From Antechinus flavipes (lineage: Eukaryota): a stretch of DNA of 64,000 bases. The position numbers and the translations under genes are program-made. Each line of letters begins with the position of its first letter. Position 1 is the first letter of the stretch. Positions 346 to 54,339 of the stretch are shown one piece after another. Below the pieces are notes generated by a model that saw nothing but the letters and a program-made list of their open reading frames with translations, was not told the origin of the DNA and searched no databases. The stretch spans positions 130,634,001-130,698,000 of the forward strand of contig NC_067401.1 of assembly GCF_016432865.1 (NCBI RefSeq). Reading direction: 5' to 3'.

Positions 346-443
346 TACTTCAAAGTATCGAACATAAAGCAAAAGATGAGAATTTGAACCTATGCCCTTT
401 TCCCTCGGGGCCTCTCCCCCAGGAGCCTACAAGACCCCCTCAC

Positions 444-2031
444 CTGCCACATCCAGATCAACCTTGAAGTTAGCAGCGTGGGTATGGATGGTCCCTAAGG
501 TGTGCTCCCCAACCCGGTTCCCATATCTTCGGCCAGCGCCAAATAAAAAGGATGAGCTGATGTAGCCGGTAGCATGAAACTTGACCTCTATGGCTCCATT
601 GGGGTGGAAGGCCATGTCCCACACGTAATCATAGTTGAGTAGAGTGGACACAGACCTGACAATCAACACTGTCCCCGGGAGACCCCCGTAGTAGTAGGAG
701 AAAATATCAGAGTGGTGCCGCCGCAAGGGGATGCCCTGGTTCTGTTCGAATATGCACAGAGCATCGCGGATGGTCCTTGGAGCCCCAGAATCTGCGAGGA
801 AGTCCCAGTCCACGTAGGTGGCCAAGTATGGACAGTCCACTCCCCGAGTCAGCGGTGTGGAGAACAGGCCCATGCCAAAATTTCCGTCTAAATAGCGAGT
901 CATCATGGCTGCCGGGGAATTGCCGCCATAGATAGTCAAAGCCTCCTGGAGGCCCACCTCATAGGCCACGCGCTCGCCTTGGAACCGGATGTCAAAAATC
1001 CTCAGGCCGCTGAACAACTCCAGGCTGAAGGTGAAGGTCCAGAGAGGAGAGGCCACCTGGCTGCCTTGGACGTGGTATCTGGGACCCTGGGGAGAAAACT
1101 GCAGTGGGGGTGGAGCACCTGGGGAGCCCCGGGGCCTGAGGGATGAAGGTCCCTTGGAGCTGGGGGGTGCTATCTCTACAACTTCCACCCGTCCTCCCTC
1201 AAACTCTCTTTCAAGGACCTCCAGGCTCTCGTAGTACCGACCGTTGTAGAAGGCCCGCTGAACTCTCCACTGATCAGGGTCCAGGGCCGCATGGTCCACC
1301 AGCAGCTCCAGCCCCACGGGGTGGAGGTAGAAGCCAGCCCCTGAGACATTGTAGTAGATCCCAAACCAGGTGGCCCGGTCCCCCGAGCGCAGGCCCCGGG
1401 GAGCAGTGGTCATGGACACCAGGTTGTTCTTGTAGTAGCAGCAGCGATGGAGGAGCCCACTGATGCGAGGCAGCGCATGCTCGGAGATCATCCTGCTCAC
1501 TTCTTCGAACTCCTTTGAGGACAGTGGGCGCTTGTAATAGGGGAGGGGGCCCCCGTGACGTTCTACAGTCACATCCCGGAGGTAGGCAGGGTTGGGCAGC
1601 GGCCCCACCACCAGCTCACTCACATTGGGCTGGGCCTGCTGGCCAAAGAAGACAATGGCTAGAGCCTCCCGGGGGGGTGGAGGGCCCCCCCTGTCCAGGT
1701 GGGCCAAGGCTGCGGCCTTGGAGGGCAGCTGCAGCTGCACTGAGTAGACAGAGTTATCAGATGGTTTGGCCAGGTTTGCATCCACCAGCCCTGATCCCAG
1801 CCTCTGGGTCAGGAAGCCCATGACAGAGGCCAGCTCCTCCCGGCTCAAGTCTGAGAACAGCCGGCTGGGGTCCGGGTGTGGCCTGAGCAGGCTCTTCTGG
1901 GCCGTCAGGGGGGAGCACTGGGGAGGTGGGCTGCACCGCCCCCCACCCCTGCCGGTCAGCAGGACACAAACCAGAGCAAAGATGATGAGGATGGAGATGA
2001 CCAGAAGCACCAGAGCTGTCCTCAGGTTCAT
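444..2031 (-). CDS. AOC3: Copper amine oxidase 3 (VAP-1/SSAO), coding exon 1 only (1588 nt); exons 2-4 lie left of the window
   Basis: ATG at 2031 starts a type II anchor ([25 protein letters not shown]). Vicinal CC, catalytic Asp in [11 protein letters not shown] motif STLLNYDY with the AOC3-type Leu before NYDY, and Cu ligands HTH are present. Phase-1 donor G|GTGAGG at 443. Directly downstream of AOC2, as in human. Confidence 0.9.
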
Positions 2032-2513
2032 GGCAACATGGACAGTCAAACCTAAACAGAAAGGGGAATGGGGAGGGGGATATCTCCAGGCAAGGGCAGT
2101 GCTTGGGGTTATGTGCCTGGTCACAGGGCAAAGCTGCCAGACTGCAGAGATATGAGAGAATGTGTAGGGCCCAGACAGCAGGGGGGAGGATCGGAGGGAT
2201 GGGAGGACCAAGGGCGGGCCAGCCGGGGGTGGAGGCGGAACTGAAGCAGGGGCCACTGGAGCTTGAGCTGAACCATATAAGGATCTGTCTTTCATATGGG
2301 GTCCTGCTTCCAGAGGCAGAGCTGGGGGTCACGCATGGGAAAGGAAAATGAGAGGAACGCAGGAGAGAGAAGGGGCTGAGTGCTATGTCCTCTGTCCTAC
2401 TCCTATCCCCCTTTTCCAGCCTCCATTTCTTCCACCCTATTCTCCCCTTCCCTCCCACATCCAGATGTGGCCTTTTCTTTAGTTGCAAAATATTGTTCAG
2501 CCTCCAAGGGAAA

Positions 2514-5800: not shown

Positions 5801-8800
5801 AAGTGTAACCCTGACTCTTCCTTTGTGAACTAATCCTCTCATCTCATTTCCACACTCCAAAATGTCACATTTTCATCATTCATCCACTCCTTCCTTGTTT
5901 TCAGAGTAATATTTCCTTTACAACTCTTAGCAAAGCTAAATCCCTCCATTTCTGTCCCAGTCTTCCAGTCACAGAACTTGCTCCTTCATATCCATCTTTG
6001 ACTCCTTCCCATTTGCTTATAGACATGCTTAGGTTTCCCTTATCCTAATCAAATCTTCCCTTTCCTTACTACTTATCAAGCTATTTCTTCTTGGCTTTCT
6101 TCTTTTACTCTCAAATGTAGTATTTCCAACGTAAGCTTATCACTTTTCTCCCTTAACCTGCTCCTCCCTTCTGATCACTCTTTGTGGCACCCACTGTTTC
6201 CCACCACCAGTTTCCCACATTCATAATAACCTTGAGACTACCTTTGACCATTCCCTTCTCTTTTCCCTCTCATAGCCAATTACCTAGATTTAATGTTTAC
6301 ATAGCCATACTCTTCTCATTTGTGCTCCCCCTCTCTCTATTCCACAATCACCACCTTAATATTGGCCTTGAGGACCACTTACCTGGACAACTGTAATAAC
6401 TTCTTCACAGGTCTCCAATCTCTATTTCTCCCTGCCCCATAGCTCTCAAATTCACCCTGTATACTACTGCCAGCATTATTTTATTAGCAACTCTAATCAT
6501 ATCATTCCTCTGTTCAAAGAATCATCATTGGCTCCCCTTGTCTTTTGAAGTTGACTTGTCTGCTTAACTCTCCATTCTCTGTAACCATTATACCTTCCCA
6601 GCCTTATCTTGTTACTTCCCCTTCCCTCCCCCACCTTGAACTCTTATAGTCAAATTGAAGTATATATATGTCCTTTACACACACACACACACACACAGCT
6701 CGTGTTTTTATACATTTGCCCTTAAATGCAATGCTTTCTGTAGAAATGCCCTCACTTCTTGAGTTTTCCTACTGAATCCTTAAGTCATCTCTTAAAAAAT
6801 TCATTTCAAATACTACCTCATTCAAGAAACCTTTCTGAAGTTTTCTACCCAGCCACAGTGTTTTGAGTCAAAGAATATGGGCACTAATCTTGAGACTCCT
6901 TACTATGTGTATGACTGGTTAGTGAAATAGGAGGAAAAGCATTTAGTGCAATTATGTCTGACATATAAAATCTATAAAGGTCTTACATATACATTGTCAT
7001 ATATATATATATAATTTTATACATACATACACACACGACCAATGGAATAATGACCAAGAGACATGAACAAACAAATCAAAAGAATTACAAACTGCTAATA
7101 AGATTAATAACCATAAAAAATGCAAACCAAGAAACCTTAAGCTACTACCTTCATACCCAACTAGGATGAGAAAAATAGCAAAAAATAATCAAAATCAAAA
7201 TTGGTGCAACTGCAAGGAAAACAGGAACTTTTAATGAATTGTTGATAGAGCTGCAGACTGGTGCAAACATTTTGCAGAGTAGTATATATGTCAACATATC
7301 ATGAAACTAAAAAAACTGGCTAATTTTTGTTCTAACAATTCTTATAGAACCCTTGCCCTAAGATATTATAAAAGGATGCTTATATTTAAAATATTCATAA
7401 TTGCTTTATTTGTAATAGAAAAAAAAGGAAACCCATCTATATATCCAAGAACTAAATGGCTGAAAATGTTATGGAACCTACCCTTGGAATACCCGGGTTC
7501 AAGTTCTGCCTTTGATACACTTTGACTATGGCAAGCCAATGAATTTCTTAGTTATAGGCAATTCTTTAAAACTACAAATTGCAGAGAAGGTGCCAATCTG
7601 CATCAGCAAAGGGAGTTTCCTCATCGGGAATTCTCTAGTTCAATGAAATCACAGGTTCAGTCCCTTTCTATGGTGTAATATACATGGAAGCAGCTAGATA
7701 GCTCAGTGTACAGAACCCTGGACTGAGTCTGGGATACCCATCCAGAAACCCCCACACACTTATAGCTATGTAACCCTAAGTAAATCATTTCATTTCTATT
7801 AAAAAATGAGATGCCCTTTCTCTCCCACAACTGTTGAGGGGATCTCTTAAAGGGAAGTCCCTGGATCCACAGAAATCCTGTGCTAAGTATGTTCCCCAAA
7901 TTCCCATCTTCATTCAACTGTGCTATACACTGGTAGCCTTTATAGTTAGGCTCAGGTGGATATCACTTGAGACAGTACACTTAAAGCACTTTGGCAAAAT
8001 CTTAAGATGCTACATAAATGCATGCTCTTAAATGTTGATTTTAGGAATTGGGAAAACTTGGGTTCAAATCATGGACACATGGTAAAGTCAATCTCCTCAA
8101 GTTTCCTCATCTGTGTAATGGGGAAGTGTCCATTTTCCTATCTCACAGGGTTGTTGAGAGGTTCAGATGAAACAATAGCCTTTGAGGGCTCTACAACAAT
8201 GTTAGCTATTAGGTGACACAGGCTTCTTTCATAACTTCTCTTTGTTCACAACAGCCAGCTGCAGGTAACCACCCAACTCACCCAAACCACCATGATCCCT
8301 GTAGGTTTATGTAGCTGGCTGTATCTCCCATGTTGCATCACTGATCACAGAGCATGCTGCAAATAGCAGAGATCAGTTTATGCAGAAACACAAAACCTAA
8401 AACAATTTAATAATTCCAGCTAATGTGAGAATGTGAAGCAAAGGTGATGACCCTGTCTAGACATCTGATAAACTGTTTCATGGACTCTCTGTGCCTGATA
8501 CTTCATATAGTGGACAATATAATTGCTCAGGTCACTCTCACCAAGTGCATTATACTACTTGTGTGGTGCTCCAACTTTATCCCCTCAATCTCCTTCCAAA
8601 GACTGGTATTTTGGATCTTTCTCCTTATATATTCCTTATTAACCAACCCCAAATTACCTGCTACATCCAGGTCCAGCTTGAAGTGAAAGGCATGAGTGTG
8701 CAGTGTCCCCAGGACTTGTCCCCCTATACGGTTCCCAAAGCGAAGAGTATTCTCTCCCCCACCTAGAAAGGCTGTATTGATATAGCCTGTAGCATGGACC

Positions 8801-10245
8801 CGGCCCTCAAGTGCTCCATGAGGGTGTAATACAAAGTCCCAGATGTAGTCATAGTTGCCCACAGATGACACCGACCGGATAACAAGAGCCGAACCAGTTA
8901 CGGCACCAAAGTAACGACCCTGTGCCTGGTTATGGTGTCTTCGAAGAGGCATTCCCCGTGCCTCTTCAAATACACACAAGGCTCCAGGGAGCAACTGGGC
9001 TGTCCCTTGGCCCACCAGCACATAGGCATCCACCATAGTGGCTAAATAGGGACAATCCACTCCCCGTACAAGCCCCCGACTGTGCCGACCAATCCCATAA
9101 GTGCTATCCAGGTAGTGGGTCATCATTGTCTTTGGTGAATGAGCACCATAGATGGAGAGACATTCCTGGACACTGATTTCATAAGCCACCCGCTCCCCCT
9201 GGAACCATACATCAAAAATCCTCATGCCACTGAAAACCCCAAGGCCAAAGGTAAACGTCCAAAGTGGAGAGGCTACTTGACTCCCTTGGACACTATAGCG
9301 GGGACCCTGGGGTGAGAACTGCAGAGGAGGAGGAGGACCTGGAGGTACCTTAGGCCTCAAAGAGGATGCCCCATCTGGCAAGGGTGGAGCAATCCTAACC
9401 ACATCCACTTGGCCAGCCTTGAACTTTTGCTCCAATTGGCCCAAATCCTCATAATAGTAGCCTTGATAGTAGACCTTCTGGAGGGACCACTGAGCTGGAT
9501 CCAGGTCCCCGTGATCCAGCAGCAGTTCCAGCCCCACAGGATGCAGAAAAAAGCCAGCATCTGAGACATTCTGGTGGAGGGCAAGCCAGGTAGTACGCTC
9601 CCCTGATCCAAAGCCATGAGAAGGTGAGGGCACAGGTGCCAAAGAAGAGCCATCGTAATTGAAGACCGAAGTCAGGAAGACAGGTGCCTTAGGCAGCTCT
9701 ACCTCCTTCAAGTGCTTCCACATTTGGGCAAACTCAGTCTTCAGCATGGGGCGCCGATAATATGGGAGAGGACCCCCCCAGCGTTCTATGGTCACATCGC
9801 GAAGGTAGGAAAGGCTTGGCAGTGGCCCCACCACCAACTCACTCACATTGGGCTGGGCCTGATGGCCAAAGAAGACCACAACTAGAGCTTCGCGGGGGGG
9901 TGGTGCTTTTCCCCCATCCAGGTGGGCCAGGGCTGCGGCTTTGGGGGGCAGCTGCAACTCCACTGAGTAGACACAGTTGTCTGAAGGGCTGGCATGGCTC
10001 GCATCTACCAACCCTGTCCCCAGCTGCTGGGCCAGGAATCGCATCACTGCGGCCAACTCCTCCCGGGTCAGATCTGAGAACAGCCGGCTCCTATTAGAAT
10101 GCAGCCCAGACTGACTGACAGGGGTCCGTGAGGGACAGTAAGGAGTTTGGCTGGAAGCACCCCTACCAGTCAACAGAACACAAACCAGAGCAAAAATGGT
10201 GACAACGGAGAGAGCCAGGAGGACCAGAACCACCCTTGTATTCAT
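2885..10245 (-). CDS. AOC2: Copper amine oxidase 2 (retina-type), 4 exons, 756 aa
   Basis: Exons 10245-8658 (1588), 5515-5230 (286), 5029-4900 (130), 3151-2885 (267); all introns GT-AG; total 2271 nt. TPQ motif SSVGNYDY with the AOC2-type Gly, YLD catalytic Asp, HTH plus LHIPH Cu ligands, C-terminus [14 protein letters not shown]. Confidence 0.95.
3440..4620 (+). mobile_element. L2 fragments with an inserted SINE tail (AOC2 intron 3)
   Basis: Pyrimidine-rich L2 motifs (ctcaagctcagcatgttcaaaatagaa, ttcaaatgccacttt); SINE tail gcacttagcacagtgtctggcata near 3750. Confidence 0.55.
5587..5606. repeat. (AC)10 microsatellite
   Basis: Read directly. Confidence 0.9.
5990..6860 (+). mobile_element. 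L2 fragment (AOC2 intron 1)
   Basis: cctggacaactgtaataacttcttcacaggtctcc, tcatatcattcctctgttcaaa, ttcaaatactacctc. Confidence 0.55.
7050..7475 (+). mobile_element. Old L1 ORF2 C-terminal fragment
   Basis: A-rich; residual IFIIALFVI...KWLKMLW resembles the L1 ORF2 end. Confidence 0.65.
7490..7665 (+). mobile_element. MIR3/Mar3-type marsupial CORE-SINE
   Basis: gcagagaaggtgcc...gggagtttcctc...caatgaaatcacaggttcagtcc tail; a similar copy lies at about 44490-44670. Confidence 0.6.
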
Positions 10246-11228
10246 AGTGAATACCAAACAGATCAAGTCCTGGGAAGAGTTCTCCCAGTTGCTTCTCCCA
10301 GCTCCAGGATCCAACTCTGGGGAGAAAGCTACTCCCTGGGGCGGGACTGAAGCTCTCCACCCCCTGGTCTAGATATGTAATTTTCTCCATACTTTGGTCC
10401 TGCCCTCTCCATTTTCCTTTTCTGTGGTTTGGCTTTCCCAATTGCCATCCCCCGCTCCCCTATTCTCCCCACCCCCAGCCCCAGTACACCCGTGAGTCAG
10501 GCTCCAACAACAATAAAAAATGTAGGTACTTTTCATCACTGCCAATGTTGTTGGTTAAAAACTTTTAATTTAGGGGTTTCCTTTAGTTGAAGGATAGCAT
10601 AGATCATGGGTAAAGAAATTTTTAGAATCTTGAAGTACAACCAAACAGGTGCTGGAAATAAGATTCCTGCTTTAAGTCTCCTTACAAGGCATCCTTATGC
10701 AGAGCTAAAGAGCACTGGACTGCAAGTCAGAGAACCTAAAGGATGCATCTGCAGGAAATATTAATATCCTCAAGTCACAGGGCAAGTCACTCTACCTTTG
10801 TGGGGCTAAGGGAGGTGGGGAGGTTGTCTCAGTTCCTTAAAGTCCATAAGAATTGGAATAGTTACATCTCCAAAGTTTTCTTAATTCTGATGCTGTATAC
10901 ATACAGGTGTGTATACGTACACACACACCATGTCTTATCTCTTCCATTTTAGTATAGTCTTAAGGGGAGCCAGCATCTGTACCATCCTTTTTTCCTATCC
11001 CCATTAACATTTCCCTTAGTACAAATAAGCTAGGTCCTTGGCAAGCCTTTCAAAGAAAAGGGAACTCCTGAGCTCCAGGACTAGAGAACATGACCATTCA
11101 GTGCAAAAGACAGGTACTCTTCCCCACATGTGCCTCTGCCTCACAATCCTAGGATGCCCTCCCTTTCATCTACTCTCCATTTCCCACACTAGTCTTTTTT
11201 TTTTTTTTTTTTAACGGATTCTGATAAG

Positions 11229-13686: not shown

Positions 13687-13837
13687 NNNNNNNNNNNNNN
13701 NNNNNNNNNNNNNNNNNNNNNNNNNNNNNNNNNNNNNNNNNNNNNNNNNNNNNNNNNNNNNNNNNNNNNNNNNNNNNNNNNNNNNNNNNNNNNNNNNNNN
13801 NNNNNNNNNNNNNNNNNNNNNNNNNNNNNNNNNNNNN
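13687..13837. other. Assembly gap (151 N) in the proximal PSME3 3'UTR
   Basis: N run. Confidence 1.
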
Positions 13838-13842
13838 TGGCC

Positions 13843-16800
13843 TCAGTACAGCGTCTCTGCATTGCTGCTCCGGGGCCGCTTGATCTTCTCAATGTTTTTC
13901 AGGATCATGTCATGTAAAGTGACCTGAGAGAGAGGTTGGGGGAGGGGGAAGGAAAATCACCCACCTGGCTCTCATCCAGCCTAAGCATAGGGACTTCAAA
14001 CAGCTTTCAGGTAAGAGATGGGATCACTGGATATCAACCACCAACTTTATGGCCCTGAGCTCTCAGATGAGAATCAGACATGCCCATGCCCATGCCCATG
14101 CCCCCGCCCTCGCCGCCCCCCCCCCCCACTCCCATCCCCTGGAGATGAGTGCTGAGAGAAGCCAGGGCAACTGGAGAGTTATGTAGTAAAGGGGTCACTC
14201 ACGTATTGGTTCCTCAGTTCTGATATGATGAGCCGAAGGCTGATATATTCTTTCTCATCAATCTCTGTCACTGTGCGTCGATAGTCTTCCTGAAGAATAG
14301 GAAGAAAGGAAAGGAAAGGAAAGGAAAAGGAAAGGAAAGAGGAGTGGCTGTTTTTCAGGGCCAGGAGGAGGGTGGGCTTATTCAAGACTTTTCTCCCAAT
14401 TTCACACTTCTCATCCCCCCACCCAACAAAATTTTCTCACTTACCACATGGGGATATTTGGCTATTTTAGAAACCAATTTGGCTCTTGTAATGTAATATC
14501 TGGAATAAAAAAAAAAGAGGAAAGAGCAAGTAGTAGGAGGAGTCAAAGATTAACCCTATTCCCCAATCCCTGGGCCAGTCCCCAACAGTCTTACCTAGAA
14601 ATCTGGTCCAGATAAGATGCAGCTTCACTCTCCACAGTCCTTAGTTCTGCAACAGTCTCCTCCTATGTGGGATTAAAGGATGGATGTGTGAAAGCAAATC
14701 CATTCCTACTGACACCCCAAAGGATATCAGCTAGTAAGGCCCCAAAAAAGCAGATGAGAAAATGCTTGACTACGTAAGTAGACTTTCATTTAAGGATTTT
14801 ATTAGACAATCAACCAAGAACCTGTATTTTGCAAAAGTACAAAAGTAATGTTGGATACAAATGTAAAGATCACCAAATTTCTGCACTAAATGAAATAAAT
14901 TCCTTGAGGGCATATGATCTAGTTTATCATCTAATCAGAAGGCATTACCTGGATGGATACACCAAAGTTATTCCCATCTTCTATCCTGGGGATAAGGAGC
15001 TGAACCCACATTTTGACCTGGAAAGAAAACAAAGCAACATGAGAACATTACTTATGTGAAAACTACTACTGGGTGAAGGAAGAAAGGAAAAGAATCACTA
15101 AACACAAACTTGGCAGGGAAGCATCTACTGCCCTTCCACCTCAAAAATAAAAATAAGTAAAATACAAAACCACTTTCCTCTTCCCATTAAGACTTTTCCC
15201 CATCCACCATGATTTTCATTTCTACTCTGGCCTTACCGTATTGCATTTCTCGATCAATAGCCGGATTTCAGGTTTCACCTTTTCAATAATGTCCACCAGC
15301 TGCTGGTTGCTTTTTAACATCCCATTAGGCATCACAAATACCTTGGTACCTGGTAGGAAAAGAAACAATTTTTTTTTTCTGGTCTATAAGAGGTATAGAC
15401 ATTTTTCTCTCTTCTTCCCAAAGCCTCATAAGCCACCCTTCTCCTCCTCAGTACTCTCACCCACACAACCCCTGGACTTCCCCCAACACATGACCCTAAA
15501 GTCAGGTCAGGACTTCCCTTGCCTCAATGAAAAGCAGTTTTTGTGTGGCTCAAAATTCTAAATTCAGATACGTTCAATTCTAGAAAATTCAATCAGACTG
15601 TAGCACTCTGGATACCAAATCAACCAAGATGAGGCTTACGGGAATAGGTTTGGGGAAAAAGATAGTGCTCACCCTGGAAGGCCTCCTCACATTCATCCAA
15701 CTTCCTCTTCTTCAAAGTGGGCTAAGGACATGCAGAGGTTAAGTGTTATCCTCCTCAAAGACATCAATTTTTAAATTACTTTACCCTATTCTTCCCATAG
15801 AGTCCTGAAACCTAAATTGAAAGTCCCTCATTGTTGATTCCATTCAATTCAATAAACATTTATGTGCCTATGTCAATGGCACTGTGCTAAAATACCCCAG
15901 AGATAAAGACAGTAAACAATCTGTTCTCAAGAAATAATTTAATTGAAAAGACTAAGCTCATTAAAAGCAAATGATGGAGATGATTTGGTATTGACTTCAT
16001 TTAAATAAATACTAATAAGCACTTAAACAAAGAAATGATCAATGGGGGGTACTGAATTTATTTGGGAATTCTTGCTTTAGACCTATACTAGTTCTGTAAA
16101 TAGCTGATAGTTACATAGTGCCTCTTTTCAGATTTACAAAGTACATTACATATATTATCAAATTTTCATATTCAAAACTACAAGTCAGAAGGAAGGGTGA
16201 GCTTAGACAGCAACAACTTCCTAATCTTTGACAGAATGAGATACCAACTGGTTAAAAAAAAAAAGTCTTACCCAGGACCAGATATCTTATAACCTCTAGA
16301 GAATGCGTATGTTGATTTCAGTACTGTTGGATGTCACAACAGCTTTAGGAACAGGATAGTTAAGAGTCTTCTCATGTTACAAATACAGAAACAAGATGGA
16401 TTATGCTAAACTCTCAGAAAGTGGCTCCTAGTCCCTGAAATAGGTCTTTAATACAAACAGAACTCTGGTTTAGGTGCATCTATAGATCAACAACAGAGAG
16501 TAGTAAAGAGAAACTTACACCATCCAATCCGTCGTGGCTATTGGTAAGAAGGATAGGATCAGGGACAGGGAGATTCATGTCTGAGTGGATCTGGGTTAAA
16601 TCATGGATGTTTAAGATAGGCTCCTGGAAGGAGGAAAAAATATGTTTCTAAGTTAAATAGAAGTGTAAAGATGATTTAAGTGGAAAGATGAGGGGCTATG
16701 GGTATGGAATGTCACTGTCAGATGTGGTCACTGCTAGCTGCTTGTGCTTAACTATTTTTCTTCATTATAAGGAAGGACTCAGGGGAATAGAGGTACAATT

Positions 16801-18059
16801 ATATCTGGAAATGACTTCAATGTTAAAAGAAAAGGAATAAGAATTCTTTTTTGAGGTGCAAGGAAGGAGAATGTATGTGTTAGAATCAAACACAAAGCAG
16901 ACAATTCCAATTTGCTATGGAGTCCAGCATCCTGAGGGAACTGGGGATAAAGGTAGCTATAGAAGGGAAGGGAGGGAAAGGAAGTATCTCTCACCTTCAA
17001 AAAACTATCAAGTTCTAACAACTTCTTTGGGAAAAAATTTGCCACCAAGTCTTCTGCCTGAAAGGGACACAGTGAAGTTGACTTACTGCTTGCTGGAGGG
17101 CTCTTAGCATCCAATCTACACACTCCCCAGGTGACCTCTTTTGGGTATCCCCAACTAAATCAGTCTTCTCTTCCCACCCAGCAAGAAGCATCACTACATC
17201 ACTCACCTCACTTGTGATCCGCTCCCTGAAAGAATCAACCTGCAAAGGGCAAGAACATACATCAGAACTTCTTCCAGGGTCTGGTAGCAGGAGGAACAGG
17301 TGTTCTCAGAAGCAAAACAAACAAACAAAAAACCCTAAACTCCACAAATACACACCAAAAAACTGTTGCTGGTGCCTCTGCTCACCTTGTAGTTGTAATG
17401 AGAAGACGAGAGACCCCCAGATTCTAAGTATTTTATTTTTTTGAGGATCCATTTTTCCATCTTGGGGGTGGTACCCACGGAATAGGGGCCAACACTCGTC
17501 GGTTTTTCCTCCCTCCCTATGTCAGCTTGCTCTCAGGGGTAAGGGGGTTGTAGGAGAGTGGAGACTTGGGGGCTGTGATCTCACAAACGCATCCCCCAAC
17601 CCTCAGTGACGATGCGAGGGCAACCCCAAGCACCTGTGGGATGTTGGCCTCCGGAGGGGGGAAGGGGGTTGGCGCTGCACAATCGATAAAGGGAAGGTTG
17701 GTTTTCGCTGCGGCTTGCCTACGGAACCCGGCCCAACACGTGTCCGTCACCGCCTTCCCTCTCTCCTCCCTGAGCCCTGAGCCCAGCGCCGGTAGAAACT
17801 GCAGCGGCCCCAGAATAATAGCATCCCCGGGTGAAGCGACGCTCCGCCCGCCTCCAGGAAGAGCCGATGGCCAACCCGGGCTGGTAGCAGGATGGGGCGG
17901 GCCCGGGGCAGGGGGAGGGGGCGGCGGGATCGGAAGTCCCCCCGGGAGACAAAGGCGGCCGCCGCGGGGTCAGGAACCGGCCCGGCGGGGTCGCGGGGAG
18001 GAGGCGGGGGCTGCTACCTTGAGCTTCACTTCCTGATCCACCTTCAGCAGCGAGGCCAT
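13843..18059 (-). CDS. PSME3: Proteasome activator PA28gamma/REGgamma, 11 exons, 254 aa
   Basis: Exons 18059-18018, 17239-17207, 17057-16995, 16623-16519, 15721-15673, 15349-15237, 15017-14949, 14662-14595, 14499-14445, 14289-14203, 13923-13843 (765 nt). Reads MASLLKVDQEVKLKVDSFRERITSEAEDL...KRPRSSNAETLY*. Confidence 0.98.
17386..17460 (-). CDS. PSME3: Alternative N-terminal coding exon of PSME3 (MEKWILKKIKYLESGGLSSSHYNYK) inside intron 1
   Basis: Strong Kozak AAG ATG G, 25 open codons, phase-0 donor AAG|GTGAGC in frame with exon 2. 21/25 identical to the human isoform-3 N-terminus as I recall it (MEKWILKKIKYLQSGGLSASYYSYK). Confidence 0.8.
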
Positions 18060-18720
18060 GGCCGGGGCGGGCCGCGTCCGCTCCGCTGGGGGCTCCGGGA
18101 CGGGAAACCGGAGGACCTGGGCACAGGGGCAGGCTTTCGGCTTCCTTCGGGCCTCCGCCGGCCTGTCTGGCTCCCTCGCTTCCTCGCTGCCTGCCTCCCG
18201 GGCGCCTGCCTGCCTTCCTGCCTGCCTCCCTGCTCGCTCACTCGCTTGCCCGCCCGGCTTCCGCCGCTTACAGCGGAAGTCGCGTCACAGCCAATCGCCG
18301 GCAGGCTCTCGGGCGGCACGTGCCTGGCGCGCGCTCTTACGCACGCGTGCCCTAACGCGCGGCGCTAGCTCGGGCCGGAGGCCAAGGGACTGGGCTTTCT
18401 CTTGTCTCTAGTCACAGGACCAGCTCCGAGTAGAGAACTGGAGTCAGGGGCGACCTAGGAGGCTAACAATAGCTAGTGCCTTCCTCCTTTGGGTCTCAGA
18501 ACATTACGTGGCTAATGAGAGAGGCCAGAGGGGCCTCGGGCATCTTCGGCCGTCTTCACATCTCTGGTGGAGGCCAGGCGCCAGCGCGCTGTCGTGTGCC
18601 AATGACGTCAATATTGCGGGCCGGGTCCTGGGCTGTCAGTGGAACCCAGCAGGTGCATGCCTCGGGCCGGGGCGGGCTACTTCAGAGCCCTGGGATACTT
18701 GCCCAGGTGCCAATCTCTGG
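17560..18720. promoter_or_regulatory. PSME3 CpG island/promoter
   Basis: High GC and CpG density; ETS CGGAAGT 18274-18280, CCAAT 18291-18295, palindromic E-box GGCACGTGCC 18315-18324, full CRE TGACGTCA 18603-18610. Confidence 0.8.
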
Positions 18721-33700: not shown

Positions 33701-35575
33701 CAGTTCCAGGGCTCTGCTTTCTCACTCCCTCTCACCACAGGTGCTGCTTGGCTGCAAATGCTTTCTGCTTGCTTAACCATGAACCTACAGGAGTGGGGGG
33801 AGGACAGGAGTAAACAATCTAGCCTTCCACACATTCCAGAGGGAGCATTTGTTCCTTAGATTGCTGCATCTTAGTCTCACCAATATCAATTTAAGACTTA
33901 GTTAACACTTGCAAGTAAAGGAAATCAACAGCAATGCCAAGGTACCATTTCAACAGTAGTGAGCACATTAATTAATCTGAGAGCTACCTAGTTGCAAAGC
34001 CCTCATGCCCAGGACTTTACCTTTCTAGGATTTCTACTGCCTGGTAGCTCACGGATTTTTCCAGGCACCATTGTTCAGACAGGAGAAAAATGAACTCTGC
34101 CAAAATAGAAAAGAAAAGCCTGAATCACAAGATGCAACCCTAACCACTCTGAACTATCAGTGTTGTGTAAAAACCGTGATGCACGACTCAAGTTAGAGGG
34201 TCAGAAGGTGAGAAAGATGAGACCAGAATAACTAAAGCAGAGCTTAATTTCTTTTGCTGCCAACAAGCTGATCAGATGTACAAAAGGGAAGTCTTGATTT
34301 GAGTGCCAAGAGCAAGATCCTTGGTGACAAGGGTTCAGCAGATAAGAACTCTTGCCTGGTACCAATATACATTAACCCCTTTCCCACCCTCTTATCTGTT
34401 CATATTCTTGACTGCTGGGAAATTTATGGAATAGCTAAGAAATCCTAATACCTATAGTTTAATATGAAACCAAACCGGCTCTCTTGAATTTTAATCTTGC
34501 TGATGACAATTTTGTTTAGCAACCTTCCTCTGGAGATTTCCCATGCATGCATAGTTTAACTCCACCCACTTTATAGTGTGCACGATTCCTCTAATCTGTT
34601 AAGTGGAACTAAAGTGACTGAATTCCTTACCTCCCTCCTTCTCTATCTTCTCCCACCAAGTTGTATTGTGTGTTTTTCTTCACTAATAAATTGGTAAAGA
34701 CTAGTCCTAACAGCCTCCAATATTTCCCTTTGAATGAAAAGTCCCAGTTGGAATTGTTTAACTTGCAATTCCATTATAGGGTGGGAACCAGGAAAAATCT
34801 CAGTTCTCAACAGAGGAGCTTTCCAAGACCCCTGGGTTATACATAAAAGACCATCAGCATGGGACTGCAGATGGTCAGATACATGCAGAGAGAACTGTAC
34901 GGCAGCCAAATCTCTCTTCACTGAAACCCGTCTCTCTTGACTAATGTGCAGCGGTAAATCCAAGACAATCCCACAACCCTCTAGCACATAAACAATACCT
35001 GCATAAAATATCCTGGTAGACACACAAAATCCCACCCTCAATACACAGGTATCGGTACCGACAGTGGAAAACTAGATTAATTCGATTATCTCCTGTATCT
35101 CTATTGCCTGGCATATGTAATTACTTTAAAAATGTATCTTGACTTGATGGACCTTGAAAATTCAGACATTGTGTCTAGACTTTAACCAAAATAAAATGCC
35201 TCCTGTGTTTTCTAGTTGGTTTTGGGACCTTAAGGATCTGAGCAATGGCTTTGGTTTTCTCGTGGCTTACGGAAGAAGGGGGGAAAGGAAAGGAGCGTAA
35301 GAGAAGGAAAAGGGGAGGAGCTGAAGCCCTCGAGGCAAGGTTGGGGATTTTGGCGCCTCGGGTGCGCAACACACCCCATTCCCCCCCAGTCCTGGGCCCA
35401 CACCCACGATCCGGGTCTCCCTGAAGCTGCCCGCCTGCCCCCGGGCTTCCCGCACCGCCCTCTCATTCTCTTGGGCTAGGTGGAGCAGGGCGTCTTCGAT
35501 CGTCTGTGTGTCCACAGCGCCAAACTTAAAGTCACTGAGGGAAGCCGACGCTCTGGGCCCCGCGGCTCCAGCCAT
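30786..35575 (-). CDS. CNTD1: Cyclin N-terminal domain-containing 1 (meiotic crossover factor, COSA-1 orthologue), 7 exons, 331 aa
   Basis: Exons 35575-35404, 34096-34021, 33784-33610, 33035-32873, 32293-32152, 31557-31461, 30956-30786 (996 nt). Motifs [76 protein letters not shown]. Confidence 0.96.
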
Positions 35576-36200
35576 AGTCAGCTGCCCTGCACACCCTCCA
35601 GACAACAACGACCCCTTTCCCCCCTCCCCCCCAGACTCTCAGAAACTTTGCAGCTTATGCCGGGCCTCGTGCTCCCAACGGCTTTTCTAGGTCTCAACTG
35701 CCGGGCTCGCGGGCTCCACGGGAGCTTCAGCCAATCAGAAGGCGCGCCCAGGACACTCCGCCTCATCTCCGATTCTTCCGAAGAAAAGGTCAGCCAGACT
35801 ACAAGTACCAGAATCCTCAGCGACGACGACGACCAAGGGGCTACCGTCCTTTCCGGCGTGCGCCGTGGTTCTGACCCGCTCTGGAGTAGGTCGAGGAGCG
35901 AGATGGCTGATTCCAGTGCTGGCGGAGCTGCGGGATCAGAGACTGGGAAAGCCCCCGTAGCGCAGCGCATTGACCCGGCGCGAGACAAACTGAGCCCGGC
36001 CCAGCTGCACTTTATGAGGCAGGTGGAGCTCTCCCAGTGGCAGAAAACGCTTCCGCAGCGGCGAGGTCGCAACATCCTGACCGGACTGAGCATCGGGGCC
36101 CTCGTGTTGGCCATTTGTATCCGCCGGTCACGGAGGTTGGGGGAGGGGAAGGGAGCAAGAGAAACGAGGCTGGAGTCGGGGGAAGGAGAGAGAGGGGGCG
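35330..36200. promoter_or_regulatory. Bidirectional CNTD1/COA3 CpG-island promoter
   Basis: Divergent ATGs only 327 nt apart; CCAAT 35731-35735; MYB-like CAACGG 35676-35681. Confidence 0.8.
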
Positions 36201-37703
36201 AGAGTGGGGGTGGGCCTTAGAATTCGAAAAGACACATTTAATTTCCTGATGGGAGCCAATGATTTGTCCAAGGTCACAGTGCAAGACAGTAACATAGCCT
36301 TGCCTGATACTAATTAACAATTACCTAATTTCTTAATAGCAGTAATTTTTTTTATAGCGCCTACCCTGTGCCTTGACACAATGCTAAAAACCTTCCCCCA
36401 AATATCTCTTTTGATCCTCAGGAGCAGTAGATGCTAGTATTATCCCCATTTTGCAGATGAGGAAACTGAGGCAAATCTATTTGCCAACAGGTTTGATTGC
36501 CTAATGTCACACAACCAGTATCCGAAGATGAATTTGAATTCTTACAGTACTGAAGACCTTCCAGGTCTACCCTAATTCTTCAGTCCTCAGATAAAGCTTT
36601 CTGCTCTCCAGGAATACATGGAGAACAGATAGCTACAGGCACTGGATCTTTGGGTTGTATGGAGTGTATTGGTATAATAAAATAGGTGAACAAATCAAAT
36701 ATTTATTGATAATAAGTCATAATTTTGCTGATCCACATATTCAGTTGAGACCCTATATGGGATCATGACCCACTAAATAAGAAGCTGGGATCTAATCAGC
36801 ATCCAGAGAAACAACTATGGAGACAGAATGTGAATCGAAGCATATTATTTTCACCTCTTTTGTTTGCTTTTTTTTCTGGTTTTTCCCTTTTGTTCAGATT
36901 TTTTTTTCCACAAAATGACTGCTATAGAAATGTTTTAAATGACTATACATGTATAACATCAAATCGCTGTCTTAAGCAGGGGGAAAGAAATTGGAACTCA
37001 AAATCTTAAAAAATGAATATTGAAAACTATCTTTACATGTAATTGAAAAAATAAAACACTACTGAATTCAGGAGGGAAAAACAAGCAGCTGGAGTCTAGG
37101 GAATTCCCTGATGGGGAGATTCCTAGTGCAGGTCAGTACTTAGAGCTTTAGGATGCAGAGGCTGTGCCTTGCAGAAGCAAATCTTGAACTCTTATCTTTC
37201 TGGCTTGGAGGCTGGCTTGCTCTCCATTATGCAGTACTACTTCTGGTCACTGTTCTTGTCCTAATGAGCCAGTGTGTTTTTGTTGCCAGGCTTGAACCCA
37301 GCTTTTCCTTAGTTAGAAGCTGTTCTTTTCCACTACTGCCCAGGGGAGAATAACTGGAAAAGAGGTAGGATCAGGGTTGCAGGTAGAGAACAAATACACT
37401 GAACATGTATGAATGTTGGGGGTCAGGGTGGGGGTGTGGTTTGAATTCCAGGATGGGGTGGGAACCACTTGAAGGAGACCAAAAAAAAAAAAAAAAACAG
37501 CATAGACTACTGGGAGGAGGGGTTGGGACAAGTTGGGGAAAGAAAATTGAGGGATGTACTCTGATTTCCTTATGGTTTTCCTGAGCCCGTGACTCCCAGA
37601 TGGCTATACATTCTACTCAGTGTCCCAGGAGCGGTTCCTGGATGACTTGGACGACAAGGCCAAAGCTGCTAGAGTGAAAGCTCCTGGGACCAATAGCCCC
37701 TAA
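35903..37703 (+). CDS. COA3: Cytochrome c oxidase assembly factor 3 (CCDC56/MITRAC12), 2 exons, 105 aa
   Basis: Exons 35903-36116 and 37600-37703. Reads AQRIDP...[15 protein letters not shown]|[26 protein letters not shown]; single TM segment; head-to-head with CNTD1. Confidence 0.95.
36117..37599 (+). other. U12-type (minor spliceosome) GT-AG intron of COA3
   Basis: Donor GTATCCGCC; branch-like TTCCTGAG at 37578-37585 and TTCCTTAT at 37566-37573; no polypyrimidine tract. COA3 is a recognised minor-intron gene. Confidence 0.8.
36775..37060 (+). mobile_element. L1 3'UTR fragment inside the COA3 U12 intron
   Basis: cagagaaacaactatggagacagaatgtgaatcgaagcatat...ggaactcaaaatc; the same family occurs at 20210 and about 49315-49530. 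Confidence 0.7.

Positions 37704-39340: not shown

Positions 39341-54339
<14,999 letters not shown>

What the first reader, a model, noticed from the sequence alone, without database searches (positions are those of the whole stretch)
17386..17460. Hidden, deeply conserved alternative N-terminal exon in PSME3 intron 1
Seen: strong Kozak AAG ATG G, 25 codons (MEKWILKKIKYLESGGLSSSHYNYK), and a consensus donor AAG|GTGAGC in phase with exon 2, giving a 265-aa PA28gamma that replaces MASLLKVDQEVKLK. The ORF track misses it. Recalled: 21/25 identical to the poorly characterised human isoform-3 N-terminus, with mostly conservative changes. The first 12 residues form a basic amphipathic helix (M1, W4/I5, I9, L12). 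Inference: retention since the marsupial-eutherian split implies function, for example altered heptamer assembly, targeting or membrane binding of a proteasome activator.
Basis: partly seen in the sequence, partly recalled or inferred. Interest (0 to 1): 0.75.

Follow-up and report, generated by a model that had tools for sequence, protein, structure and literature searches.

The report
Annotated alternative PSME3 first coding exon
The 25-codon mini-exon in intron 1 of the proteasome-activator gene PSME3 is real and has been kept as protein-coding sequence since marsupials and placental mammals split, but public gene annotations of marsupials and many placentals already carry it, so it is a known isoform of untested function.

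Summary
Observation confirmed. On the minus strand, an ATG at 17460 opens 25 codons (MEKWILKKIKYLESGGLSSSHYNYK). They end at 17386 on a GTGAGC donor, in phase 0 with PSME3 exon 2 (17239). Canonical exon 1 is at 18059-18018.

The exon is neither hidden nor new. A 265-aa database protein (P0165, "isoform X1", with Monodelphis, Sarcophilus and two other accessions) starts with exactly these 25 residues.

In 14 non-redundant therian genomes the exon is always 75 nt, with the ATG, the AG just before it and the GTGAG donor all kept. Marsupial-to-placental identity is 0.85 in the exon against 0.24-0.48 in the flanking intron. Changes fall 7/2/26 on codon positions 1/2/3, and dN/dS is 0.03-0.08. That is protein-level constraint.

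No counterpart was found in intron 1 of three passerines or a green turtle. Monotremes were not tested.

Expression evidence is therefore indirect.

The functional ideas (amphipathic helix, targeting) stay speculative. Verdict: already known kind and member; modest interest.

The parts
17386..17460 (-). Alternative coding exon (exon 1b) of PSME3: ATG + 24 codons, MEKWILKKIKYLESGGLSSSHYNYK
   Evidence: It is 25/25 identical to the N-terminus of database protein P0165. It is conserved at 0.85 identity to placentals against 0.24-0.48 for the flanks. Codon-position changes are 7/2/26 and dN/dS is 0.03-0.08.
17380..17385 (-). 5' splice site GTGAGC of exon 1b (phase 0)
   Evidence: GTGAG is invariant in 14 therian loci.
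17461..17480 (-). C/T-rich tract ending in an invariant AG directly before the ATG. It supplies the Kozak -3 purine and is a possible 3' splice site for in-frame cassette use after exon 1.
   Evidence: 279-aa forms (exon 1 + this exon) are predicted in Dipodomys, Ochotona, Arvicanthis and Marmota, and the same exon 1 + alt exon junction appears in a 476-aa partial Galemys record. Use in this genome is not shown.
17575..17589 (-). Conserved block CGTTTGTGAG(A/C)TCAC about 115-130 nt upstream of the alternative ATG; candidate core-promoter or start-site element of exon 1b
   Evidence: nearly invariant across marsupials and placentals. It lies where the RNA word share (0.57-0.63 of 17330-17620) would put the 5' end if RNA contigs end at the donor. 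This is inference only.
17356..17385 (-). Ten-codon extension of exon 1b (VSRGTSNSFL) up to an alternative donor GTGTGT at 17355
   Evidence: The first 35 residues of database protein P0172 (Sarcophilus harrisii isoform X4) equal the translation of 17460..17356 exactly.
18018..18059 (-). Canonical PSME3 exon 1 coding part (MASLLKVDQEVKLK), donor GTAGCA, inside a CpG island
17207..17239 (-). PSME3 exon 2 (VDSFRERITSE), the acceptor shared by exon 1 and exon 1b

Best explanation
This is exon 1b of PSME3 (PA28gamma/REGgamma) in a dasyurid marsupial genome, most likely Tasmanian devil. It is a short alternative 5' coding exon on the downstream shore of the gene's CpG-island promoter. Transcripts that carry it splice from the GTGAGC donor at 17385 to exon 2 at 17239. 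Translation from the ATG at 17460 then gives a 265-aa subunit in which the canonical first 14 residues are replaced by 25 others. The replacement consists of a short basic, partly amphipathic segment (residues 1-12), a Ser/Gly hinge (13-18), and a few residues that lengthen helix 1. The exon arose no later than the therian ancestor, and its amino-acid sequence has been under strong purifying selection since. Shown here: the sequence anatomy, orthology to annotated isoforms, and codon-level constraint. Inferred: that its main use is as an alternative first exon from an internal start site near 17565-17580. Also inferred: that the functional effect comes from changing the N-terminal part of helix 1, which in PA28 rings forms an inter-subunit belt and in PA28gamma is reported to carry a second nuclear localisation signal (review PMC7915322).
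For: Sequence and phase. Identical annotated N-terminus in marsupial isoform X1 (P0165, 265 aa), and 20-24/25 identity in bilby, bats, rodents, hedgehog, mole, cattle/pig/ferret and Old World monkeys. In all 14 non-redundant therian loci the exon is 75 nt with the ATG, the preceding AG and GTGAG kept. Conservation rises sharply at the ATG and falls after the donor, at 0.85 against 0.48 upstream and 0.24 downstream. Parsimony changes by codon position are 7/2/26 (chi-square p 1e-6). Nine amino-acid changes stand against about 25 synonymous ones (binomial p <= 1e-8). Pairwise dN/dS is 0.03-0.08 with dS 0.5-1.3, so silent sites drift while the peptide is held. CpG-island shore position. Fourteen RNA or RNA-guessed runs from nine studies hold a uniform 0.57-0.63 of the words of 17330-17620, while DNA-like runs hold 1.00, as expected if only an exon-sized part is transcribed into contigs. 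The Sarcophilus X4 model uses the same ATG with a species-specific alternative donor. The AlphaFold2 model gives helix 2-13, coil 14-18, and helix 1 from residue 19.
Against: No read-level junction evidence was obtained. The run shares could also reflect partial intron retention or sequence divergence of other species labels. The database isoforms are mostly automatic predictions, some of which may be propagated by homology. No peptide evidence and no paper on this isoform turned up. The N-terminal helix has low model confidence (pLDDT ~59) and its amphipathicity is not significant. An invariant AG plus pyrimidine tract before the ATG fits cassette use as well as first-exon use.
Confidence: 0.85

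Rival explanations
1. The exon is used mainly as an in-frame cassette. Exon 1 splices to the AG at 17462-17461, and the 75-nt exon inserts 25 residues between K14 and V15. The product is a 279-aa subunit that keeps the canonical N-terminus.
For: The AG directly before the ATG is invariant, and a pyrimidine-rich tract precedes it in all 14 loci. The exon length is an invariant multiple of three with phase 0 on both sides. 279-aa exon 1 + exon 1b forms are predicted in Dipodomys, Ochotona, Arvicanthis and Marmota, and the same junction is seen in a 476-aa partial Galemys record.
Against: In this window the acceptor is a weak AAG with a poor pyrimidine tract. The marsupial records found carry the 265-aa first-exon form, not the 279-aa form. 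The invariant ATG with strong Kozak context is not needed for a cassette. A 75-nt cassette alone could give at most about 0.17 of the words, not 0.57-0.63. The two modes may coexist.
Confidence: 0.1
2. The conservation reflects a non-coding function, such as an intronic enhancer, a promoter-proximal element, or a regulatory or decoy exon. The ORF would be incidental and the isoform records would be annotation artefacts.
For: The exon sits on a CpG-island shore beside a conserved upstream block. No peptide or literature evidence for the protein was found.
Against: Substitutions are concentrated at third codon positions (7/2/26). Synonymous sites are nearly saturated between marsupial and placentals (dS 0.5-1.3) while dN is 0.035-0.053. 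There is no indel in 14 genomes. Conservation starts exactly at the ATG and ends at the donor. A DNA or RNA element would not leave silent sites free to change in this way.
Confidence: 0.04

Closest known systems
265-aa PSME3 isoform with alternative N-terminus as annotated in marsupials (P0165: isoform X1, accessions XP_007482215.1, XP_031822189.1, XP_044532869.1, XP_051850343.1; P0177 Macrotis lagotis X1)
   Same: The first 25 residues are identical to the window exon (P0165), or 24/25 identical (P0177). The splice to VDSFRER is the same and the total length is 265 aa.
   Different: Nothing detectable. The window exon is this annotated exon.
Placental PSME3 isoforms with the MEKW... N-terminus (P0164 'n=29 Eutheria', P0045, P0166, P0167, P0170, P0173, P0174, P0178, P0180, P0188; by my recollection, human RefSeq 'isoform 3')
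   Same: Orthologous 75-nt exon at the same place in intron 1, 78-104 nt upstream of exon 2, with the same ATG, phase and donor. Amino-acid identity is 20-23/25.
   Different: Marsupials have E13 and S19 where most placentals have Q13 and A/P/S19. The intron to exon 2 is longer in marsupials (140-146 nt). The human record itself was not seen here.
Canonical PA28gamma (254 aa, exon 1 MASLLKVDQEVKLK)
   Same: Everything from exon 2 onward: PA28_N and PA28_C domains, activation loop and C-terminus.
   Different: The first 14 residues are replaced by 25 unrelated ones. By my own recollection (not tested here) the canonical N-terminal lysines are SUMOylation sites. Review PMC7915322 places a second NLS at the canonical N-terminus and an inter-subunit belt at the start of helix 1.
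Sauropsid alternative PSME3 N-termini (Chelonia mydas X1 P0048, Struthio camelus X1 P0050)
   Same: They are also alternative 5' coding exons joined to exon 2.
   Different: The sequences are unrelated. The turtle exon lies upstream of exon 1, not in intron 1. No MEKW-like exon is detectable in turtle or passerine intron 1.

Membership tests
PSME3 / PA28gamma gene (host gene of the exon) | Exons encoding the PA28gamma sequence in order on one strand, in conserved synteny | tested here: met
   Eleven coding pieces from MASLLK (18059) to NAETLY* (13846) lie on the minus strand. Exon 4 is 100% identical to database PSME3 proteins. Copper amine oxidase genes lie downstream and COA3 upstream, and BECN1 is head-to-head in sauropsid loci.
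Annotated alternative N-terminal exon of therian PSME3 (265-aa isoform) | Peptide MEKW(I/V)(L/I)KK.KY..SGGL.....K encoded in intron 1 | tested here: met
   25/25 identity to P0165; 20-24/25 to 20 other records.
Annotated alternative N-terminal exon of therian PSME3 (265-aa isoform) | Same genomic position and splice phase: between exon 1 and exon 2, with a phase-0 GT donor joined to VDSFRER | tested here: met
   every one of 17 therian loci has the order exon 1, then alt exon (458-557 nt after the exon 1 donor), then exon 2 (78-146 nt further).
Annotated alternative N-terminal exon of therian PSME3 (265-aa isoform) | Evolution as coding sequence (frame kept, dN much lower than dS) | tested here: met
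Annotated alternative N-terminal exon of therian PSME3 (265-aa isoform) | Spliced transcript 17386->17239 present in RNA of this species | tested here: inconclusive
The only indirect evidence is the run shares and the devil isoform models P0165 and P0172.
Annotated alternative N-terminal exon of therian PSME3 (265-aa isoform) | Protein product detected | not testable with these tools
   No peptide strings were found in the paper library. Supplementary proteomics tables were not searched.

The most novel reading that the evidence does not exclude
The alternative N-terminus gives therian mammals a functionally distinct PA28gamma subunit. It drops the canonical N-terminal segment, reported to carry an NLS and, by my recollection, SUMO-acceptor lysines. 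It adds a basic helix on a flexible hinge at the start of helix 1. The result would be a change in ring assembly, sub-nuclear or cytoplasmic localisation, or partner binding. About 160 million years of dN/dS near 0.05 on a 25-residue peptide argues that the peptide itself does something specific.
Probability: 0.5. Interest if true: 0.5.

Novelty: already known. Interest (0 to 1): 0.25.

Why it matters
PA28gamma is a nuclear proteasome activator studied in cancer, cell-cycle control and nuclear-body biology, almost always as the 254-aa form. This check shows that a second N-terminus is as strongly constrained as the rest of this very conserved protein across marsupials and placentals. The isoform therefore deserves a direct functional test. 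For the scan itself the result is ordinary: the exon is already in public annotation, including that of the likely source species.

Tried and rejected
No junction, depth or start-site data were obtained.

2. A phmmer search of 50%-identity representatives with exon 4 returned only fragments and odd gene models. None carried the alternative N-terminus. It served only to get a full-length id (P0006).

3. Six literature searches found nothing on this isoform: PSME3 + isoform 3, the peptide strings, RefSeq/UniProt isoform accessions recalled from memory, alternative first exon, and alternative promoter.

4. Locus look-ups failed for mouse X2 (P0131, not on record), bilby (P0177), golden mole (P0053) and one marsupial assembly (files too large).

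5. A weak turtle match (IDSGGLSA, then SYK in another frame) was examined and rejected. Its local alignment score of 30 lies within the shuffle range (mean 24.8, max 33).

6. The amphipathic-helix claim: hydrophobic moment 0.53, not significant against shuffles.

7. Rfam scan of the window: no hits.

8. A non-coding regulatory reading was rejected on the codon-position pattern.

Full report
**1. What is in the sequence**

The minus strand of the window carries PSME3 (PA28gamma).
- The coding pieces run from MASLLKVDQEVKLK (ATG at 18059, donor after 18018) to ...NAETLY-stop at 13846.
- Exon 2 (VDSFRERITSE) begins at 17239 behind a good acceptor, ttgccctttgcAG.
- Inside intron 1, 17460..17386 reads ATG plus 24 codons, MEKWILKKIKYLESGGLSSSHYNYK.
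- The ATG context is AAGATGG.
- The exon is followed by AAG|GTGAGC, which fits the donor consensus better than exon 1's own AAG|GTAGCA.
- Both this exon and exon 2 break between codons, so the frame runs on.
- The nearest upstream in-frame stop is the TGA at 17537-17535. The only other ATG between it and the start opens a 3-codon ORF.
- The exon lies on the 3' shore of the PSME3 CpG island. GC is 0.64-0.78 and CpG o/e 0.7-1.0 over about 17600-18500, falling to 0.42-0.51 at the exon.

**2. It is already annotated**

I searched with exon 4 by reference (16519-16623, a stretch the reads filter had passed) to reach database PSME3 proteins. I then used a database protein id for the word search.
- The representative of the main mammalian cluster, P0045 (Thomomys, 265 aa), starts MEKWVLKKIKYLQSGGLSSSHYNFK.
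- A search restricted to its first 40 residues found six clusters with this N-terminus.
- The cluster listing and a comparison of N-termini gave:
  - P0165: 265 aa, 'isoform X1', with accessions from Monodelphis, Sarcophilus and two other marsupials; 25/25 identical to the window.
  - P0177 (Macrotis): 24/25.
  - P0164 ('n=29 Eutheria': pig, cattle, ferret): 23/25.
  - Bats, hamsters, hedgehog, mole, spiny mouse: 20-23/25.
  - Colobine monkeys: 22/25.
- P0172 (Sarcophilus harrisii isoform X4) begins with the same 25 residues plus VSRGTSNSFL. That equals the window translation of 17460..17356 exactly and ends at a GTGTGT donor. The other marsupial locus, L001, differs there. The window is therefore most likely Tasmanian devil or a very close relative, and its own annotation already has the exon.

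**3. Is the conservation coding?**

I fetched genomic loci for non-primate records only:
- L001: marsupial.
- L002-L011: loci returned for protein P0164, whose source names include Bos indicus, pig and ferret. L002 as cattle, L008 as dog and L005 as otter are my recollection of the assembly accessions.
- L012: hedgehog.
- L013, L014: bats.
- L015, L016: hamsters.
- L017: pocket gopher.

Results:
- All 17 loci show the order exon 1, alternative exon, exon 2.
- In the 14 non-redundant sequences the exon is always 75 nt. The ATG, the AG immediately before it and the GTGAG after it are invariant, and there are no indels.
- In a MAFFT alignment from exon 1 to exon 2, marsupial-to-placental identity is 0.98 in exon 1, 0.43 in the first 457 nt of intron, 0.48 in the 100 nt before the ATG, 0.85 in the alternative exon, 0.24 in the intron beyond the donor and 0.99 in exon 2. 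The edges of the conserved block coincide with the ATG and the donor.
- Fitch parsimony on the intron tree counts 7, 2 and 26 changes at codon positions 1, 2 and 3 (chi-square p about 1e-6). There are 9 amino-acid changes against about 25 silent ones, where 74-79% non-synonymous would be expected by chance (binomial p <= 1e-8).
- Nei-Gojobori estimates between the window and each placental give dS 0.5-1.3, dN 0.035-0.053 and dN/dS 0.03-0.08.

Silent sites have drifted nearly to saturation while the peptide is held.

**4. How deep does it go?**

- Three passerine loci (L018-L020, intron 1 about 530 nt) contain no match by tblastn or short-word blastn. These three are one clade, so the sample is small.
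- The green turtle locus (L021, intron 1 3.6 kb) also contains no match. The best local alignment to the turtle intron scores within the shuffle range.
- The alternative N-termini predicted in turtle and ostrich are unrelated in sequence. The turtle one lies upstream of exon 1.
- On this small sample the exon is therian. Monotremes, Afrotheria and Xenarthra were not obtained.

**5. How is it used?**

Two modes fit the anatomy.

(a) Alternative first exon, giving 265 aa.
- All marsupial records take this form.
- It makes sense of the invariant ATG and Kozak context.
- It fits. Fourteen RNA or RNA-guessed runs from nine studies hold a uniform 17-19 of 30 sampled words of 17330-17620, while DNA-like runs hold all 30.
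- If the RNA contigs end at the donor, that share puts the 5' end near 17565-17580. This is just downstream of the most conserved upstream block, CGTTTGTGAG(A/C)TCAC at 17589-17575.
- This is inference. The shares could have other causes.

(b) In-frame cassette after exon 1, giving 279 aa.
- This form is predicted in Dipodomys, Ochotona, Arvicanthis and Marmota, and the same exon 1 + alt exon junction appears in a 476-aa partial Galemys record.
- It is made possible by the invariant AG and a pyrimidine tract, which is strong in placentals and weak (cccccAAG) in the window.

I favour (a) for this genome and expect (b) to be at most minor.

**6. What might the peptide do?**

- An AlphaFold2 model of P0165 with a 50-sequence alignment gives a helix at residues 2-13, a coil at 14-18 (SGGLS) and a long helix 1 from residue 19. 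The first 20 residues have pLDDT of only about 59.
- The hydrophobic moment of residues 1-12 is 0.53 with net charge +3, higher than the canonical N-terminus (0.18-0.31), but 10% of shuffles reach it.
- The PA28gamma review PMC7915322 states that the N-terminal parts of helix 1 project from each monomer and form a belt round the heptamer. It also states that PA28gamma has a second NLS at its N-terminus. It does not mention this isoform.
- The most likely effect, by inference only, is on ring packing, localisation or partner binding rather than on the 20S-binding face, which lies at the other end of the molecule.
- Membrane binding has no specific support.

The 265-aa length comes from database proteins used by id.
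- Database PSME3 proteins used by id naturally include residues orthologous to that exon. Examples are the first four exon-3 residues within region 1-40 of P0045, and the whole proteins.
- I fetched no primate or human locus. P0169 and P0170 were read only as protein N-termini.
- The N runs (13687-13837 and 47133-47668) were left alone.

**8. Verdict**

The exon is real, coding and conserved since the therian ancestor. It is also the already annotated alternative N-terminal exon of PSME3. What remains open is the biology of the isoform, not its existence.

Noticed in passing
window 17575-17589 (minus strand): The block CGTTTGTGAG(A/C)TCAC is nearly invariant between marsupials and placentals, and in placentals it contains the palindrome GTGAGCTCAC. 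It lies about 115-130 nt upstream of the alternative ATG. It could be a transcription-factor site or start-site element for exon 1b, or a conserved GTGAG donor-like site.
   Followed up: partly
window 17356-17385 and donor GTGTGT at 17355: A devil-specific ten-codon extension of exon 1b is used in database isoform X4 (P0172), which also skips exon 3. The other marsupial locus, L001, has a different sequence here.
   Followed up: partly
window 13687-13837: A run of 151 N begins 9 nt after the PSME3 stop codon (13846-13848), inside the 3' UTR.
   Followed up: no
window 427-2295 and 8527-10314 (minus strand): Two large open exons with copper amine oxidase N2, N3 and enzyme domains (AOC2/AOC3-like tandem pair) lie downstream of PSME3.
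   Followed up: partly
window 35480-36220 (plus strand): An ORF with a weak Coa3_cc match (23.9 bits, below the 27-bit cut-off) is consistent with COA3 in the conserved PSME3-BECN1-COA3 neighbourhood. BECN1 itself was seen head-to-head with PSME3 only in the bird and turtle loci, and was not checked in the window.
   Followed up: no
window 17935-17959 (minus strand): A 25-nt island of high marsupial-placental identity (0.79) lies in intron 1 just downstream of exon 1, within the CpG island. It is unexplained.
   Followed up: no
P0169 (catarrhine, 308 aa) and P0046/P0183/P0186/P0187 (279 aa): Some placental models join exon 1 to the alternative exon in frame. They do so either directly at the AG before the ATG or, in catarrhines, through 29 extra codons upstream of it. 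In the window the frame upstream of the ATG is open for only 24 codons.
   Followed up: no
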